DNA of 64,000 nt, taken from the sequence record JN849462.1. One strand, written 5' to 3'. Position numbers and translations under genes: made by a program. The notes beneath the pieces were generated by a model, which was not told where the DNA came from, ran no database searches, and saw nothing but the letters and a program-made list of their open reading frames with translations. Shown piece by piece: positions 44,947-60,667 of this stretch (position 1 is its first letter; each line of letters begins with the position of its first letter).

Positions 44947-45471
44947 CTATTTGCGCCCTTTACGATTTGCCTTATTTGCTTTTCTTTTTGCTCTACGCAA
45001 TTCTTTGCGTTTTGCGATTTTGTCTGCACGTCTAACTGCATCATAATCCGCAGCACACGACGCAGCAAACGCATCAGGCTTGAAAACGGGTTCTTGACCC
45101 ACGTATCCCAAGATAGTGCCCTTAGCTTCGTTATACGCAACGTGTGAACGATGGGATGGGTCTGGGTTGATGTCAACGTGAACTTCAAACCCACGAGTAC
45201 CACACATTGGCTTAACACGCAGGGCGGTTTCACCTGCTTTATAGACTTCATTCATCAAACGACTACGAATACCATCTTTACAAGACATGTACGCTGGTTC
45301 AGTTTCGATAGATTTGAATACTTGAGCGCCTTTACTACCCTCAAGGTGAATGATGATTACAGTAGCGTAACTAATCATATCACTCTTACGCTTGCTATCA
45401 CACCCAACATAAATCGTACTGTTCGGATGACTGTTATTGATAGCTGTTTCAATTGCTTCCCAATCGAACAT
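44947..45471 (-). CDS. RNase H-like YkuK-family protein
   Basis: IYVGCDS, EVYK, EVHVDINPD, AADY. Confidence 0.75.
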   Translation of the reverse strand: MFDWEAIETAINNSHPNSTIYVGCDSKRKSDMISYATVIIIHLEGSKGAQVFKSIETEPAYMSCKDGIRSRLMNEVYKAGETALRVKPMCGTRGFEVHVDINPDPSHRSHVAYNEAKGTILGYVGQEPVFKPDAFAASCAADYDAVRRADKIAKRKELRRAKRKANKANRKGRK

Positions 45472-45521
45472 TTTCACCTCTGTACAAAAAAGGGCAGCAC
45501 AATGCCGCCCTTATCACTTAT

Positions 45522-46958
45522 TTAAAAGCTGTAGCGATCAACGCCTACAGTTTTCAGCATGATCTTGACTGGCTCAAGCTCACCACCCAACAGTGAAGTC
45601 AGGATAGATGGGCTACAACCCGATACCAGTGCAGTACCCGCTTCGCCAGCTTTAACCGGAACGTTGCCAAGACGACCACGAATGTTCCAGAAGACCAGTT
45701 GTGGCATTTCATAGCCAGCACGTGCGTACATAGCTTTGATTGCGTCGAAGTTTGCACGTTCTCCGCGACCGTACCAGCCACCACCAGTATTTGCTTGGTC
45801 GAATTCCATGTCGCTCATGATAAGCAACTTAGTCGGCATTTCTTCTTGTGAAAGATTTGCACGTTTCGCACGTTCTAACAGAACGTTGAAGCACTTACCG
45901 ATGTTTGTGCTCATGTCTTCGCCTGATCGATTCATGTTGTCAAGACGCTCTTTTAATGAGCTACCGCGTAACTGGTGGAAGTGCGGATCGCTTGAGAACG
46001 AAATGAACTGATCTTTGAAGATGCCTTCATTGCGTTCAGCAACATAGATGCCAAGAGACATTGCAACTTGCTTACAAGTAACGCCTGAGCGGTCTGTACC
46101 TGCGTTGATTGGCGTGCTCATAGAGCCAGACACGTCAACAACTGGGATGATGCGCTCATCAGAGCCTTCCATGTAGTTCGGCAGAGCTTTCCATTGCTCG
46201 TTCGCTACAGACGCATTACCATGACTAACGCTCTTAACGACATCATATGGGAACAAAGCACCAGCGTTGATCTTCGCTTCACCTTTTTGAAGCGACTCGA
46301 TGTAGCTTGTGTAACGAGCAGAAGCGTTACGACCGAATGCTTGTTGATAACGAGCAGACGCTACAGATGGCAACTTACCGAAGTCGATTGCATCCCATTC
46401 TTGCGCACACATCTTCTGTTCAACAGTGTCAGACAAAAGTGCTAGAATCTTACGCCACTGCTTCGCAGTTACACCAAGAGACTTGATTGTGCGCTTGAAC
46501 ACATGACCGTTTTTGCTGTTCTCGCGTGGGAACCACTTCGCAGCGAGACCGTTCTTGTCATTTACAATCGCATTTGACCACAGCGTGATCGCGTCTTTTT
46601 CAAGACTTGTGCCGAAAGCAGAAATCAAGTCGTCGAAACGACCTAGTTCTGGAATTTTCGACATTACAGCACGAGCTACGTCAGGCTGCTCATTACAAAG
46701 CTTAGTGAATAGAGTACGGAAAGTACCACGTTCACCCGCACCACCGCGAACATCACGAGACCACAAAAGAATGCGTGTCGCTAGTTCTGGGTTTTCTGCA
46801 AACGCACGACCGAACAGTGTTTTAGACTGATCGTTACCACGCATAGCAGCAATACCGAAGAACAAGTTTAGACACTCGTTACCTGAAGTGCTGTGAGTAA
46901 CTGCACCGTTTGCTGTACGTGAATCGTTAGTGGTCATTGCGTTCATAAATGCTGACAT
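45522..46958 (-). CDS. TROVE/Ro60-like protein with C-terminal vWA domain (DUF2828 type)
   Basis: T.NGA, SRDVRGGAGER, GRFDDL, AAKWFPRE, KINAGALFPYD, MIDAS DVSGSM, SDMEFD, LVFWN, LVSG.SPS. Confidence 0.8.
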   Translation of the reverse strand: MSAFMNAMTTNDSRTANGAVTHSTSGNECLNLFFGIAAMRGNDQSKTLFGRAFAENPELATRILLWSRDVRGGAGERGTFRTLFTKLCNEQPDVARAVMSKIPELGRFDDLISAFGTSLEKDAITLWSNAIVNDKNGLAAKWFPRENSKNGHVFKRTIKSLGVTAKQWRKILALLSDTVEQKMCAQEWDAIDFGKLPSVASARYQQAFGRNASARYTSYIESLQKGEAKINAGALFPYDVVKSVSHGNASVANEQWKALPNYMEGSDERIIPVVDVSGSMSTPINAGTDRSGVTCKQVAMSLGIYVAERNEGIFKDQFISFSSDPHFHQLRGSSLKERLDNMNRSGEDMSTNIGKCFNVLLERAKRANLSQEEMPTKLLIMSDMEFDQANTGGGWYGRGERANFDAIKAMYARAGYEMPQLVFWNIRGRLGNVPVKAGEAGTALVSGCSPSILTSLLGGELEPVKIMLKTVGVDRYSF

Positions 46959-49082: not shown

Positions 49083-49110
49083 GATTGTTCACCTCTTAGT
49101 TAATAGAATA

Positions 49111-49156
49111 CGGGAGACACGGGAATCGAACCCATTGCCTTGACCACATATCTCCC
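49111..49156 (-). ncRNA. 46-nt mini-tRNA (acceptor stem, D-loop remnant and T-arm; no anticodon arm)
   Basis: GGGAGAU-AUGUGGUCAAGGCA-AUGGG-UUCGAUU-CCCGU-GUCUCCC-G. Confidence 0.55.
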
Positions 49157-57654: not shown

Positions 57655-57894
57655 TGGCGCCGCTCGTGTGAATCGAACACACGTCAAACACAACACCTCG
57701 TCCACCCGATTAGAGTTTCGAAGTAAGAGCTAATCAGCATTTCGGAGCAGTCGAGCGTTATTTCTACGAGTGAGCTTTCGACAACTCACACGCACTTTCT
57801 ACTCAGTCCCAGTGATTCGGTACCAACACAGGTTGCGAACCTATGTCTGCACTAATGTTGGGAAAACACTGCGTATTGTACACCAGTTAGCGGC
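57655..57894 (-). ncRNA. 240-nt tmRNA-shaped RNA with CCA end
   Basis: GCCGCU/AGCGGC acceptor, no D-stem, 8-bp helix in the anticodon position, GAC-GUGUG-UUCGAUU-CACAC, G73, CCA. Confidence 0.65.
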
Positions 57895-57901
57895 ATTTTA
57901 T

Positions 57902-58132
57902 TTAAAGATAGCTGTCAAAGACATCATCATCAACTTCTTCAATATTGATGTCAGCGTAACATTCATTCGCAATTGCTTGAATTTCATCTATTGAAACTGT
58001 ACCTGAGTACAAAACAACAGCGTCATTCGGAATCACAACATCACACATGTATTTGTTAAACATTGCAGTTCTGAAATCAGAATCAACAGAGTAATCATGC
58101 ATCGAAGTGATAACTAGCAATTTATGTGACAT
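57902..58132 (-). CDS. acidic hypothetical protein
   Basis: GAGG RBS; early promoter upstream. Confidence 0.5.
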   Translation of the reverse strand: MSHKLLVITSMHDYSVDSDFRTAMFNKYMCDVVIPNDAVVLYSGTVSIDEIQAIANECYADINIEEVDDDVFDSYL

Positions 58133-58210
58133 AATGTTTTCCTCGTGTAGTTGATAATGTGTATACTACACGTTGACGAAACGCCTGTCAACAACTTTTT
58201 CAATTTAATT

Positions 58211-58288
58211 TGGTGACCCCAACAGGGCTCGAACCTGTAACCCACCGATTATGAGTCGGTTGCTCTAACCTAGTTGAGCTATAGGGCC
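58211..58288 (-). tRNA. tRNA-Ile2(CAT), lysidine type
   Basis: GGCCCTATAGCTCA...CTCATAA, ileX-like body, CCA. Confidence 0.82.
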
Positions 58289-58289
58289 A

Positions 58290-58658
58290 TCATTTCTCTA
58301 GAAATCTACCAACTTTAGCAGCGAAGATGTTTGCTTCTTCTGCAATCAAAGCAGTCGATTTCATTTGATGAAAAGCGTCTTGTTGATGTAGAACATCTAG
58401 CTTACCCGCGCATTTCATCAGTTCTTTTACTGATTGCATAATCTCAATGTTATCAAGCTGACTAGTATCAGGGTGATGATTTAGATTATCTAAGATAGGG
58501 AGTACTTGTTGATAGCAACCCATACCGATGAAGTTTATCATAAGTCTGTACTGCATTTCAACAGCAAATGTACAATATTTTCGAAGATTGCGTTTTACAA
58601 TCTCACAGCGATGCAAGATACAATCAAGTTCGTCATTTATGTCATCAAACTTATTCAT
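58290..58658 (-). CDS. hypothetical protein
   Basis: GAGG RBS. Confidence 0.5.
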   Translation of the reverse strand: MNKFDDINDELDCILHRCEIVKRNLRKYCTFAVEMQYRLMINFIGMGCYQQVLPILDNLNHHPDTSQLDNIEIMQSVKELMKCAGKLDVLHQQDAFHQMKSTALIAEEANIFAAKVGRFLEK

Positions 58659-58672
58659 AAAACCTCGAAAAT

Positions 58673-58796
58673 TGGTGGAGAGTGATGGATTTGAACCACC
58701 GACCAAAAGATTTACCTAGTTATTAAGGTTTGCAGCATGAATGCTTGTCAGTATTCTTTAACATTCTTTTGCTCTACCAGACTGAGCTAACTCTCC
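58673..58796 (-). ncRNA. tRNA-shaped RNA with motif insert, anticodon undefined
   Basis: GGAGAGU/ACUCUCC-A-CCA; insert hairpin loop UGACAA followed by AUG-CUGCAA. Confidence 0.72.
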
Positions 58797-58805
58797 ATAA
58801 TTTGA

Positions 58806-58920
58806 GGGTGAAGTACAGGACTCGAACCTGCGACCTCCGGCGTGCATGTAAATGCAGAATGAAATCTTATCAGACTTCGTTTTTTGAGCCGGCATTCTAA
58901 CCAACTGAACTAACTTCACC
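58806..58920 (-). ncRNA. tRNA-shaped RNA with motif insert, no CCA
   Basis: CCGGC/GCCGG anticodon stem; GAAGUC-UGAUAA-GAUUUC followed by AUU-CUGCAU. Confidence 0.7.
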
Positions 58921-59714: not shown

Positions 59715-59715
59715 T

Positions 59716-59820
59716 ACTCATCTTCAGAGAAGAGACAGAAACGATGAGTCTAGTCTGTTTAATCAATGTTGTTCATCTTCAAGAAGAGGCGAGAACGATG
59801 AACTTAGCTCGCTTAATCAA
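59716..59820 (-). repeat. tandem covarying H-type pseudoknot units at the operon 5' end
   Basis: Units at 59771-59820 and 59716-59766, with compensatory changes in both stems. Confidence 0.75.
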
Positions 59821-59964: not shown

Positions 59965-60219
59965 TTAAACGGAAATGATAATGCCGCTTTCAGTCTCACC
60001 TCGTTCAAGCGCAGCGTGCTTGATCTGAAGTTGTGATACTGCTTGCTGAAGTTCAATAATAGCTTTGTCATAAAGCTTGTTGTTCTCTTTAAGCAAAGCA
60101 ATCTGATCGGTCTGCATACCAATGATGTACGTTAGTAGAACAACGTTCTCATCAGTCGTCAGCGTTTCAGGCGCTTCATTGTACTTCTTCAGCACCGCTT
60201 CGGTAGATAGATCAGTCAT
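59965..60219 (-). CDS. coiled-coil hypothetical protein
   Basis: Coupled to gp57B. Confidence 0.5.
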   Translation of the reverse strand: MTDLSTEAVLKKYNEAPETLTTDENVVLLTYIIGMQTDQIALLKENNKLYDKAIIELQQAVSQLQIKHAALERGETESGIIISV

Positions 60220-60667
60220 TATTAGCAACCCATTCTAGATCTAATGGTTCGATATATTCATCGACAAGGCGAACCTCTGTATTGATGAACATAGGGGTGA
60301 TTACGTCGTCATAAGACAATGTGACGTGCGGAGTATAGTCAGGGTAATCGTGAGTACCACCGATAGAGATAAGGTCTTCGTGACGTTCTACAAGAGCAGG
60401 ACATGACATCTTAGCAACGACCGCGTGTTTACCGTCTTGCGTTTTCCAACAGTCAACTTGTTCAACAGTGGCAACGAAAGTGGTATCTACAACGGGCACA
60501 TCAATTTGCTTACGACTATAAAGCACAGTCACGTGGAATTTATCGGGATCTAACGGATTTTTTAGACGAAGCGTTTTTTGCAAGCGAACTAGTTCTTGCT
60601 TACTTGCTTCGTCTAATTTGATACCAACGTAAGTTCCCTGACTCTCAAGGAACTTAGATAGTTTCAT
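60212..60667 (-). CDS. acb1: 2H phosphodiesterase, T4 gp57B/Acb1-like anti-CBASS nuclease
   Basis: FHVTVLYS and TPHVTLSY (two HxT motifs); 57B synteny with 57A, 1 and 3. Confidence 0.8.
   Translation of the reverse strand: MKLSKFLESQGTYVGIKLDEASKQELVRLQKTLRLKNPLDPDKFHVTVLYSRKQIDVPVVDTTFVATVEQVDCWKTQDGKHAVVAKMSCPALVERHEDLISIGGTHDYPDYTPHVTLSYDDVITPMFINTEVRLVDEYIEPLDLEWVANND

What the first reader, a model, noticed from the sequence alone, without database searches (positions are those of the whole stretch)
57655..57894. 240-nt tmRNA-shaped RNA with a non-alanine acceptor end
Seen: 5' GCCGCU pairs with AGCGGC-G-CCA. A short ACUGGUG segment replaces the D arm. UACAAUAC/GUGUUGUG forms a long-range helix where the anticodon arm would be, followed by GAC and a T-arm, enclosing about 170 nt of hairpins. 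Established: this is the layout of the tmRNA tRNA-like domain, but tmRNA uses G3:U70 and A73, whereas here it is C3-G70 and G73. A possible tag frame is AAAUAAC-GCU...UAG (ARLLRNAD), which is speculative. No smpB is in the window.
Basis: partly seen in the sequence, partly recalled or inferred. Interest (0 to 1): 0.7.

Follow-up and report, generated by a model that had tools for sequence, protein, structure and literature searches.

The report
Phage tRNA-like Y-type RNA, not tmRNA
A real, strongly conserved 240-nucleotide structured RNA sits in the tRNA gene cluster of a KVP40-type Vibrio phage; it has a tmRNA-style tRNA-like end but shows no sign of a tagging message, and it most likely is a new kind of Y RNA that partners the phage's own Ro60-like protein.

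Summary
The window is Vibrio phage phi-pp2, a KVP40-type phage. The feature lies on the minus strand at 57894 to 57655 and is real. It is a 240-nt RNA that fills a gap between two ORFs in the tRNA cluster. It is conserved in all KVP40/nt-1-type vibriophages. Covariation is strong: 93-94% of cells pair, against about 40% for slid controls, and 37-38 pairs change on both sides. It has an acceptor stem, a T arm and a stemless D-loop with an invariant GG. That helix encloses three covarying hairpin arms. The tmRNA reading fails: 3:70 is never G-U, the discriminator and CCA vary, and no tag frame is conserved. ARAGORN and the Rfam tmRNA models find nothing. No Vibrio phage record encodes SmpB. The new lead is a Ro60/TROVE ortholog on the same strand at 45522-46958, whose top ten PDB fold matches are all Ro60. 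The RNA also carries an invariant GUCGAA loop that matches the GNCGAA Ro-binding motif of bacterial YrlA Y RNAs, which are tRNA mimics. Best reading (about 0.5): a Y-RNA-like tRNA mimic with its ends in the acceptor stem. No expression or binding data were found.

The parts
57655..57894 (-). The whole 240-nt tRNA-like structured RNA (RNA position p = 57895 - window coordinate)
   Evidence: It fills the gap between two ORFs. It is conserved in 49 Vibrio phage records. Covariation model R1 scores 267 bits and finds a single copy in the window.
57889..57894 (-). Acceptor stem, 5' strand (RNA 1-6, GCCGCU). A(-2)U(-1) precede it in every homolog.
   Evidence: Six pairs, 100% paired, four of them with changes on both sides. 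The 5' flank ...AU is invariant and resembles the flank of the phage's tRNAs.
57655..57664 (-). Acceptor stem 3' strand (RNA 231-236, AGCGGC), discriminator G237 and encoded CCA (238-240). The Shine-Dalgarno sequence of the next gene follows at once.
   Evidence: CCA is replaced by ACA or CGG, and the discriminator is G or A, in other members.
57879..57887 (-). Stemless D-loop analogue (RNA 8-16, ACUGGUGUA) with invariant G11 G12
   Evidence: Invariant columns in alignment A1. No helix there is supported independently of P2.
57866..57878 (-). P2, 5' strand (RNA 17-29): long helix at the anticodon-stem position
   Evidence: It pairs with RNA 199-210. Twelve pairs are 100% paired and three changed on both sides: A-U to U-A, and A-U to G-C twice.
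57685..57696 (-). P2, 3' strand (RNA 199-210)
57807..57863 (-). P3/P4 arm (RNA 32-88): a 5-bp helix, a conserved internal loop ACAUUAG / GAAUCAC, and a 12-bp hairpin capped by the 7-nt loop YUCGCWA (UUAAUUA in two lineages)
   Evidence: P3 has 4 of 5 pairs changed on both sides and P4 has 9 of 12.
57752..57805 (-). P6/P5 arm (RNA 90-143): P6 (4 bp), A-rich internal loops (UAGAAAG / GAAAUAA) and the P5 hairpin
   Evidence: P6 has 4 of 4 pairs changed on both sides and P5 has 8 of 11.
57777..57782 (-). Invariant GUCGAA in the P5 apical loop (RNA 113-118; GUCGAAAG in phi-pp2). It matches the GNCGAA(N0-1)G motif of YrlA Y RNAs.
   Evidence: Invariant in 11 homologs while the stem below it covaries. 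The motif is defined in PMC4201824.
57706..57737 (-). P7 hairpin (RNA 158-189, CUGAUUAG/CUAAUCGG) with an invariant 16-nt loop CUCUUACUUCGAAACU (RNA 166-181)
   Evidence: Eight pairs are 100% paired and two changed on both sides. The loop's UUCGA is complementary to the P5 loop's UCGAA. That possible kissing contact involves only invariant bases, so covariation cannot test it.
57666..57682 (-). T arm (RNA 213-229) with the canonical loop UUCGAUU
   Evidence: Four of five pairs changed on both sides.
45522..46958 (-). Ro60/TROVE-type RNA-binding protein (478 aa; HEAT-like repeats plus a vWA domain with a DVSGSM MIDAS motif). Proposed protein partner.
   Evidence: Pfam DUF2828 plus DUF7788. phrog_850 'RNA-binding protein'. 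Full-length, 31-33% identical to mycobacteriophage 'Ro-like RNA binding protein'. The AF2 model's top ten PDB matches are all Ro60 (9KOP, E 2.4e-8, TM 0.61; 1YVR; 2NVO).
57120..57641 (-). Conserved 173-aa protein of unknown function (phrog_15953) that starts 13 nt after the RNA's CCA
   Evidence: It lies within about 300 nt downstream of the RNA in every homolog fetched, directly or after one small ORF, and it also follows the candidate analogues in Cronobacter phage S13 and in L024. The AF2 model is confident but has no informative fold match.

Best explanation
The element is a stable non-coding tRNA mimic made from the phage's polycistronic tRNA-cluster transcript. I infer that RNase P cuts it free at G1 and that its 3' end is trimmed or repaired to CCA, as for the neighbouring tRNAs.

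Its tRNA-like end consists of the acceptor/T-arm stack, the T loop and the GG of a stemless D loop. This end presents a tRNA elbow. The helix at the anticodon-stem position carries a conserved three-arm core whose invariant GUCGAA loop is the likely docking site for the phage-encoded Ro60-like ring protein (window 45522-46958).

In other words, it is a Y-RNA-like RNA of the YrlA type, meaning a tRNA-like module plus a Ro-binding module. It is built in normal tRNA order, with its ends in the acceptor stem, and so is a circular permutation of YrlA. By analogy with bacterial and Thermus-phage Ro60-Y RNA particles, it would gate the Ro60 ring or tether it to a host tRNA- or RNA-handling enzyme such as PNPase during infection.

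Shown here: the RNA's structure and conservation, the Ro60 fold of the protein, and the motif match. Inferred: processing, Ro60 binding and the downstream role.
For: - The RNA is real. Covariation supports 8 nested helices. It is more conserved than the adjacent gene in 6 of 7 comparisons. All six differences between phi-pp2 and KVP40 preserve the structure.
- tRNA-like processing context: it lies inside the tRNA cluster, with the same ...AU 5' flank as the tRNAs. In nt-1, CZ01 and the ENA contig L022 it lies 13-15 nt after a tRNA's CCA. No terminator is predicted on its strand.
- The phage encodes a Ro60 ortholog on the same strand.
- Published Y RNAs of bacteria and phages combine a tRNA-like domain with a GNCGAA(N0-1)G motif. 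They lie near Ro60 on the same strand, and one (M. smegmatis YrlA) is cut by RNase P and receives CCA (PMC4201824). Thermus phage phiLo Ro60 binds two phage Y-like RNAs that carry a CGAA motif and recruits host PNPase (PMC12135203).
- The RNA's GUCGAA loop is invariant while its stem covaries.
- A homolog of the window's Ro60-like protein in mycobacteriophage Lumos has a YrlA-like RNA 130 nt downstream.
- In the T4-like Cronobacter phage S13 the Ro60 gene is followed within about 1 kb by the insert-bearing tRNA-like genes. A candidate 269-nt RNA with the same kind of tRNA-like end comes next, then the homolog of the protein that follows this RNA.
Against: - There is no expression, end-mapping or binding data. 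No infected-cell RNA-seq run was found.
- The RNA lies 10.7 kb from the Ro60 gene, not within the 4 kb typical of Y RNAs.
- The Rfam YrlA model does not match it at E<=10.
- The GNCGAA core sits in a hairpin loop here, whereas in YrlA it is in the 5' strand of the terminal stem.
- A 5-letter motif is expected by chance about once in four such RNAs, so its weight comes only from its invariance.
- The D stem present in YrlA is absent here.
- Ro60-like genes occur in 710 phage records, while this RNA was found only in 49 Vibrio phage records and two metagenome contigs. Co-occurrence is therefore necessary but not discriminating.
- The S13 candidate has no covariation support, because it is identical in the only relative checked.
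Confidence: 0.5

Rival explanations
1. It is a tRNA-like stable RNA unrelated to Ro60, a larger counterpart of the T4 species 1 and 2 RNAs. It would be processed like a tRNA and act as a decoy, sponge or scaffold for some other tRNA-binding factor, such as a host anticodon nuclease, a modification enzyme or the ribosome. Its partner could also be the conserved 173-aa protein encoded right after it.
For: It lies in the tRNA cluster of a T4-related phage, as do T4 rnaC and rnaD. T4 rnaC also folds with a T-arm-like hairpin near its 3' end. The 173-aa protein gene follows the RNA within about 300 nt in every member fetched (directly, or after one small ORF) and in the two distant candidates. The RNA is 10.7 kb from the Ro60 gene.
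Against: This reading does not explain the invariant GNCGAA-type loop or the presence of a Ro60 ortholog in every RNA-bearing phage checked. No sequence or structure similarity to T4 rnaC or rnaD was detected by model R1. The 173-aa protein has no recognisable RNA-binding fold.
Confidence: 0.28
2. It is a cis-acting punctuation and processing element. The tRNA-like end is only an RNase P and 3'-processing signal that separates the upstream and downstream cistrons. The structured core protects or regulates the flanking mRNAs. The Shine-Dalgarno sequence of the next gene begins 1-2 nt after the CCA.
For: The RNA fills the intergenic gap exactly. The next gene's ribosome-binding site abuts the 3' end in all members. 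No promoter or terminator of its own was predicted.
Against: About 170 nt of covarying helices with several invariant loops is far more than a cleavage signal needs. The neighbouring tRNAs already provide RNase P sites. In nt-1-type phages the upstream neighbour is a tRNA, not an ORF.
Confidence: 0.12
3. It is a minimal tmRNA-like ribosome-rescue RNA. It would be charged with an amino acid other than alanine, bound by host SmpB, and would add a short tag.
For: The tRNA-like end has the tmRNA layout. An A-rich unpaired stretch (GAAAUAA) precedes a GCN codon in 4 of 5 lineages. Every member has stop codons in the 5' strand of hairpin P7.
Against: - 3:70 is C-G in all members. The discriminator, CCA and acceptor sequence all vary. 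The nt-1 and VS2 members have a bulged U in the acceptor 3' strand.
- The candidate tags differ in length and sequence even between close relatives: ARLLRNAD, ARLL, ALA, ALYDLIC, or no stop at all. A 1-nt indel lies inside the 'message'.
- The variation in that region is explained by base-pairing in P6 and P7.
- No covariation-supported pseudoknot was found.
- There is no ARAGORN or Rfam tmRNA match, while the positive control scores 296 bits.
- No SmpB gene is found in any Vibrio phage record.
Confidence: 0.04
4. It is not a functional RNA but a decayed tRNA gene with an insertion, or a stretch that encodes a small protein.
For: Some genome records annotate short ORFs inside it.
Against: Strong compensatory covariation, and higher conservation than the neighbouring gene in 6 of 7 comparisons. 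Several 1-nt indels among homologs break any reading frame. The annotated ORFs are not conserved.
Confidence: 0.02

Closest known systems
YrlA-type bacterial and phage Y RNAs (Rfam RF02553; Chen et al. 2014, PMC4201824)
   Same: Both are tRNA mimics with a canonical T arm and an acceptor-like stem, joined at the anticodon-stem position to a module that carries a GNCGAA motif. Both are encoded in genomes that have a Ro60 ortholog, on the same strand. M. smegmatis YrlA is an RNase P and CCA-adding substrate.
   Different: This RNA is about twice as long (240 against about 110 nt). It has tRNA-order topology, with its ends in the acceptor stem, where YrlA has its ends in the Ro-binding stem. It lacks a D stem. 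The motif sits in a hairpin loop. It lies 10.7 kb from the Ro60 gene inside a tRNA cluster. The YrlA covariance model does not match it.
tmRNA (SsrA; Rfam RF00023 and relatives)
   Same: The layout of the tRNA-like domain is the same: acceptor stem, T arm, a stemless D-loop with GG, a long helix replacing the anticodon stem, 1-2 nt in place of the variable loop, and a large structured insert.
   Different: There is no G3:U70, no conserved A73 or CCA, no conserved tag reading frame, no supported pseudoknots, and no profile match in either direction.
Yrl1 and Yrl2 of Thermus phage phiLo with phage Ro60 (PMC12135203)
   Same: Both are phage-encoded Ro60 homologs accompanied by phage-encoded RNAs that carry a CGAA motif. 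The phiLo Ro60 structure (9KOP) is the best fold match to the window's protein.
   Different: The phiLo RNAs lie directly upstream of the Ro60 gene and are described as having a terminal stem with a large internal bulge that holds the CGAA motif. The passages read do not describe a tRNA-like acceptor end for them.
Bacteriophage T4 species 1 and 2 RNAs (rnaC, rnaD)
   Same: These are small stable RNAs of unknown function encoded in the tRNA cluster of a T4-type phage. rnaC has a T-arm-like hairpin near its 3' end.
   Different: They are shorter (139 and 119 nt). No detectable sequence or structure homology was found. I found no mention of a Ro60-like protein in T4; this rests on my own knowledge and was not tested here.

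Membership tests
tmRNA | tRNA-like domain: acceptor stem plus T arm, reduced D-loop, helix P2 in place of the anticodon stem | tested here: met
   Covariation-supported acceptor stem, T arm and P2, with an invariant GG in a stemless D-loop.
tmRNA | G3:U70 wobble pair (alanine identity), with A73 and CCA | tested here: not met
   3:70 is C-G in all 10 aligned members. Position 73 is G or A. CCA is encoded only in the KVP40/ValKK3 group.
tmRNA | mRNA-like domain: a conserved resume codon and a tag ORF ending at an in-frame stop | tested here: not met
No frame is conserved. A 1-nt indel lies inside the region.
tmRNA | Pseudoknots (PK1 upstream of the tag, PK2-4 downstream) | tested here: inconclusive
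   A column-pair scan found no covariation-supported pseudoknot. The only candidate long-range loop contact involves invariant bases.
tmRNA | Recognition by tmRNA detectors and profiles | tested here: not met
   ARAGORN calls none. Rfam gives no tmRNA hit on the RNA at E<=10. The E. coli control scores 296 bits. Model R1 matches only the T arm of E. coli tmRNA.
tmRNA | SmpB binding, aminoacylation, trans-translation | not testable with these tools
   No SmpB gene was found in the window or in any Vibrio phage record. Host SmpB could still be used.
Y RNA (YrlA type) | The genome encodes a Ro60/TROVE ortholog | tested here: met
   Window 45522-46958. The top ten PDB fold matches are Ro60, and it is homologous to mycobacteriophage Ro-like proteins.
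Y RNA (YrlA type) | Encoded close to the Ro60 gene (usually within 4 kb) on the same strand | tested here: inconclusive
   It is on the same strand, but 10.7 kb away with the tRNA cluster between. In Cronobacter phage S13 a candidate analogue lies 0.9 kb after the Ro60 gene.
Y RNA (YrlA type) | tRNA-like module (T arm, D arm, acceptor-like stem) | tested here: met
   The T arm, acceptor stem and the GG of the D-loop are present and covary. The D stem is absent.
Y RNA (YrlA type) | GNCGAA(N0-1)G motif implicated in Ro60 binding | tested here: met
   GUCGAA is invariant in 11 members. The full GNCGAA(N0-1)G form occurs in the KVP40 and ValKK3 groups. It lies in the P5 loop rather than in a terminal stem.
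Y RNA (YrlA type) | Match to the Rfam YrlA model | tested here: not met
   There is no hit on the RNA at E<=10. The only YrlA hit nearby (58771-58835, 29.8 bits) spans two adjacent tRNA-like genes, a known type of false positive.
Y RNA (YrlA type) | Physical binding to Ro60 | not testable with these tools
   This needs immunoprecipitation or gel-shift assays.
tRNA | Cloverleaf with D arm and anticodon arm | tested here: not met
   Neither ARAGORN nor the Rfam tRNA model gives a hit on the RNA. There is no D stem, and the anticodon arm is replaced by a 170-nt core.
T4 species 1/2 RNAs | Sequence or structure homology to rnaC or rnaD | tested here: not met
   Model R1 hits only tRNAs in the T4 region L017.

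The most novel reading that the evidence does not exclude
The RNA is processed to a tRNA-like CCA end and is aminoacylated by a non-alanine route. It then acts on the ribosome as a phage-encoded rescue or reprogramming RNA, either alone or while carrying the phage Ro60 ring. That would make it a functional hybrid between a Y RNA and a tmRNA.
Probability: 0.05. Interest if true: 0.9.

Novelty: new variant of a known kind. Interest (0 to 1): 0.62.

Why it matters
If the best reading is right, this would be a new architectural class of Y RNA. It is built in tRNA order and released from a tRNA operon by the tRNA-processing machinery. It would also link the long-puzzling non-tRNA RNAs of T4-type tRNA clusters to Ro60-type ribonucleoproteins. 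Ro60-like genes occur in 710 phage records, including Felix O1-like, Listeria A511-like, Staphylococcus, Campylobacter and mycobacterial phages, and their RNA partners are mostly unknown. KVP40 grows in the laboratory, and the RNA has clear, testable modules: the GUCGAA loop, the tRNA-like end, and a possible loop-loop contact. That would make the role of viral Ro60 particles directly testable. Even if the Ro60 link fails, this is an unannotated, strongly constrained 240-nt RNA family that is absent from Rfam.

Tried and rejected
- tmRNA: rejected, as set out in the membership table.
- My first model of the 3' core (UCCGA/UCGGG plus a 3-bp hairpin): superseded by the 8-bp P7 helix, which has more covariation. 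The two exclude each other, and position 187 is compensated in both, so a switch cannot be excluded.
- Wider distribution:
  - Two pattern scans of IMG/VR found only KVP40 and VH7D.
  - Two scans of JGI metagenomes gave nothing, or 88 chance pattern matches; model R1 matched none of the 80 loci fetched.
  - One extra member was found through its neighbouring protein (L022).
  - A distant candidate, L024:601-855, scores only as well as ordinary tRNAs.
- The downstream 173-aa protein as a tRNase: the sub-threshold Pfam Colicin_D hit (E 0.012) is seen in only 1 of 9 family members. A confident AF2 model has no informative fold match.
- Expression: no infected-cell RNA-seq run was found. The three runs that hold the sequence are genome-like contigs of KVP40-type relatives.
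- Paralogs: model R1 finds no second copy in the window. An apparent 206-nt hit in phage VS2 is two adjacent tRNA-like genes.
- The Cronobacter phage S13 candidate: the only relative checked is identical there, so no covariation test was possible.
- Literature: no paper in the held library describes this RNA or links DUF2828 proteins of T4-type phages to Y RNAs. The KVP40 genome paper and the supplementary tables of Chen et al. were not available.

Full report
**Identity of the window and of the feature.** The stretch is 100% identical to Vibrio phage phi-pp2, a KVP40-type (Schizotequatrovirus) T4-related phage. The finding lies on the minus strand. The RNA runs from window 57894 (5') to 57655 (3'). 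It sits inside a cluster of about 30 minus-strand tRNA genes. It fills the whole gap between a 76-aa ORF (57902-58132) and a 173-aa ORF whose ATG is at 57641. The region is unannotated in KVP40 and most relatives.

**Is it real?** Yes.
- Homologs occur in 49 Vibrio phage records, at 98-66% identity.
- I extracted ten homologs from five or six lineages: the KVP40 group, the ValKK3/VH7D group, D482, F86, 1.081.O and the nt-1/VS2/CZ01 group. I later added an eleventh from a marine metagenome contig (L022, 204 bits).
- Lengths are tightly constrained, at 239-244 nt.
- RNAalifold and explicit pair counting support a nested structure of eight helices:
  - 93-94% of cells are paired, against 37-46% when partners are slid by 1-3 columns.
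  - 37-38 pairs change on both sides, against 11-15 for slid controls.
  - 0 of 500 shuffles reach any observed measure.
- All six differences between phi-pp2 and KVP40 preserve structure, and two of them form a compensatory A-U to G-C double change.
- The RNA is more conserved at the nucleotide level than the adjacent protein gene in six of seven comparisons.
- Several 1-nt indels among homologs rule out a protein-coding explanation.

**Anatomy** (RNA numbering; window coordinate = 57895 minus position).
- The acceptor stem is 1-6/231-236, followed by G237 and CCA.
- The T arm is 213-217/225-229, with the canonical loop UUCGAUU. Acceptor and T stems together stack to 12 bp.
- Positions 8-16 form a stemless D-loop analogue with invariant G11 G12.
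- P2 is a 12-bp helix (17-19/208-210 and 21-29/199-207). It stands where the anticodon stem would be, and only 1-2 nt link it to the T arm.
- P2 encloses three arms:
  - P3/P4 (32-88) has the conserved internal loop ACAUUAG/GAAUCAC and a 7-nt apical loop YUCGCWA.
  - P6/P5 (90-143) has A-rich internal loops and an invariant apical GUCGAA.
  - P7 (158-189) has an invariant 16-nt loop CUCUUACUUCGAAACU.
- The UCGAA and UUCGA of the last two loops are complementary and could kiss. Both are invariant, so covariation cannot test this.
It has two mismatches in the nt-1 group, while the register above pairs in every sequence and shows three double changes.

**The tmRNA reading.** The layout of the tRNA-like end is indeed that of tmRNA. 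Every other defining feature that I could test fails.
- Pair 3:70 is C-G in all members.
- The discriminator is G or A.
- The acceptor sequence itself varies (GCCGCU, GCCCGC, GGCGGG). The nt-1 and VS2 members have a bulged U in the 3' strand.
- CCA is encoded only in the KVP40 and ValKK3 groups, and is ACA or CGG elsewhere. By contrast, 30 of 31 tRNA-type genes in the window and 17 of 18 tRNAs checked in relatives encode CCA.
- The proposed tag ARLLRNAD becomes ARLL* in a 91%-identical relative and ALA* in another. It runs on without a stop in D482 and nt-1.
- A 1-nt indel separates the KVP40 and ValKK3 groups from all the others inside the putative message.
- Variation in that stretch is accounted for by pairing in P6 and P7.
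- ARAGORN reports no tmRNA.
- Rfam reports no tmRNA-clan hit on the RNA even at E<=10, while E. coli ssrA scores 296 bits as a control.
- The family's own covariance model recognises only the generic T arm in E. coli tmRNA.
- No SmpB gene exists in the window or in any Vibrio phage record.

**A better lead.** Surveying the neighbourhood, I found a 478-aa protein on the same strand at 45522-46958.
- It matches Pfam DUF2828 and DUF7788, and PHROG 850 'RNA-binding protein'.
- It has armadillo/HEAT-like repeats and a DVSGSM MIDAS motif.
- It aligns over its full length, at 31-33% identity, with mycobacteriophage proteins annotated as Ro-like RNA-binding proteins.
- An AlphaFold model built from 28 homologs (pLDDT 76, pTM 0.73) has Ro60 structures as its ten best PDB matches. 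These include Thermus phage phiLo Ro60 (9KOP, E 2.4e-8, TM 0.61/0.62), Xenopus Ro (1YVR) and Deinococcus Rsr (2NVO).
- So the phage encodes a Ro60 ortholog.

**What is published about Ro60 partners.** Ro60 proteins work with Y RNAs.
- Chen et al. (PMC4201824) showed that bacterial and phage Y RNAs of the YrlA type consist of a tRNA-like domain plus a conserved GNCGAA(N0-1)G motif implicated in Ro60 binding.
- They found these RNAs near Ro60 genes on the same strand. M. smegmatis YrlA is cut by RNase P and receives CCA.
- Their search was limited to genomes annotated with a TROVE domain. The KVP40-type protein is not annotated that way in the records seen here.
- The Thermus phage study (PMC12135203) found two phage Y-like RNAs with a CGAA motif. 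They bind phage Ro60 and, together with it, host PNPase.

**How the RNA fits this.** The invariant GUCGAA of the P5 loop (GUCGAAAG in phi-pp2) matches the published motif, and the RNA carries a tRNA-like module.
- In YrlA the Ro-binding stem emerges at the anticodon-stem position and the acceptor-like stem is closed by a loop. Here the ends are in the acceptor stem and the motif-bearing core emerges from the anticodon-stem position. The two designs are therefore circular permutations of each other.
- As a check on the association, a YrlA-like RNA lies 130 nt after the Ro-like gene of mycobacteriophage Lumos (39 bits, E 1.7e-6).
- In the T4-like Cronobacter phage S13 the Ro60 gene is followed within 1 kb by four things in order:
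  - two insert-bearing tRNA-like genes;
  - a candidate 269-nt RNA with the same kind of end (GCUCGU...ACGAGC-G-CCA, a CUCGGUG D-loop analogue and a T arm);
  - about 20 nt later, the homolog of the 173-aa protein that follows the RNA in the window.
- The S13 candidate is identical in the one relative I fetched, so it has no covariation support.

**Limits.**
- Nothing here shows that the RNA is made, processed or bound by Ro60.
- The RNA is 10.7 kb from the Ro60 gene.
- The Rfam YrlA model does not match it.
- The motif is short, and it lies in a loop rather than a terminal stem.
- I therefore put the Y-RNA-like reading at about 0.5. The rivals are a Ro60-independent tRNA-like stable RNA of the T4 species 1/2 kind (0.28), a cis-acting processing element (0.12), a tmRNA-like function (0.04) and a non-functional or coding stretch (0.02).
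- The family appears narrow. Pattern scans of IMG/VR and JGI metagenomes found no members beyond KVP40 and VH7D.
- I found no description of this RNA in the literature available to me.

**Verdict.** The tmRNA interpretation is right about the shape of the tRNA-like end and wrong about function. What is there is a new, well-supported structured RNA family. It is most plausibly a tRNA-order variant of the Y-RNA/tRNA-mimic theme that works with a phage Ro60 protein.

Noticed in passing
window 57002-57114, 58676-58796, 58807-58919 (minus strand); also L119:2404-2646 and L024:448-564: These are tRNA-shaped genes of 113-124 nt, with full D and T arms and mostly an encoded CCA. Each carries a 45-54-nt insert in the anticodon loop. 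The inserts share a hairpin with loop CUGAYAAG, followed by an AUUCAGCA-like stretch. The same module occurs in Cronobacter phage S13 directly after its Ro60-like gene. KVP40 annotates them as pseudo-tRNAs. They may be further Ro60-associated tRNA mimics, or intron-like tRNAs.
   Followed up: partly
window 45522-46958 (minus strand): This is a Ro60/TROVE ortholog, with a HEAT-like ring and a vWA domain carrying a MIDAS motif. It is annotated only as hypothetical in the phi-pp2 record. Homologs occur in 710 phage records across many genera, and thousands more in metagenomes. An RNaseH-like ORF (44947-45477) lies just downstream of it.
   Followed up: yes
window 57120-57641 (minus strand): This 173-aa protein (phrog_15953) starts 13 nt after the RNA. 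It lies within about 300 nt downstream of the RNA in all relatives fetched, and also follows the two distant candidates. Its AF2 model is confident (pLDDT 87) but has no informative fold match. A sub-threshold Colicin_D Pfam hit looks like chance.
   Followed up: partly
window 52816-52887 (minus strand): This is the only tRNA-Ala (anticodon UGC, with G3:U70) in the cluster. It has three mismatches in its acceptor stem and is missed by ARAGORN. All 19 other amino acids have a tRNA that ARAGORN calls.
   Followed up: partly
window 49108-49156 (minus strand): This is a 49-nt element with a 7-bp acceptor-like stem and a T arm (GGGUUCGAUUCCC) but no D or anticodon arm. It lies 2.1 kb upstream of the Ro60-like gene.
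   Followed up: no
L119:2819-3087 (Cronobacter phage S13; identical in LPCS28, L120): This is a candidate 269-nt RNA with the same kind of tRNA-like end. It lies 0.9 kb after the Ro60 gene and about 20 nt before the phrog_15953-like gene. It is not detected by model R1 beyond the T arm, and no covariation data are available.
   Followed up: partly
L024:601-855 (Logan contig): This is a 255-nt candidate distant relative. It lies just upstream of a 43%-identical homolog of the 173-aa protein and has the same AAGAGGAAAUUAAAAUG 3' flank. Its R1 score (11.4 bits) is no better than that of ordinary tRNAs.
   Followed up: partly
window 59715-59816 (minus strand): Rfam gives a local sub-threshold match to the tmRNA model (positions 191-290; 12.5 bits against a gathering score of 47; E 0.015 in a 1.4-kb search). 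It is 1.8 kb from the finding and is probably chance.
   Followed up: no
window 54531-54980 and 60212-60667 (minus strand): A PD-(D/E)XK endonuclease ORF sits inside the tRNA cluster, possibly a homing-type insertion. An Acb1 (anti-CBASS, 2H phosphoesterase) gene lies just beyond the tRNA-like genes.
   Followed up: no
window 50369-58919 (minus strand): 30 of 31 tRNA-type genes encode their CCA, and most are preceded by ...AU or ...U. The same holds in relatives.
   Followed up: yes
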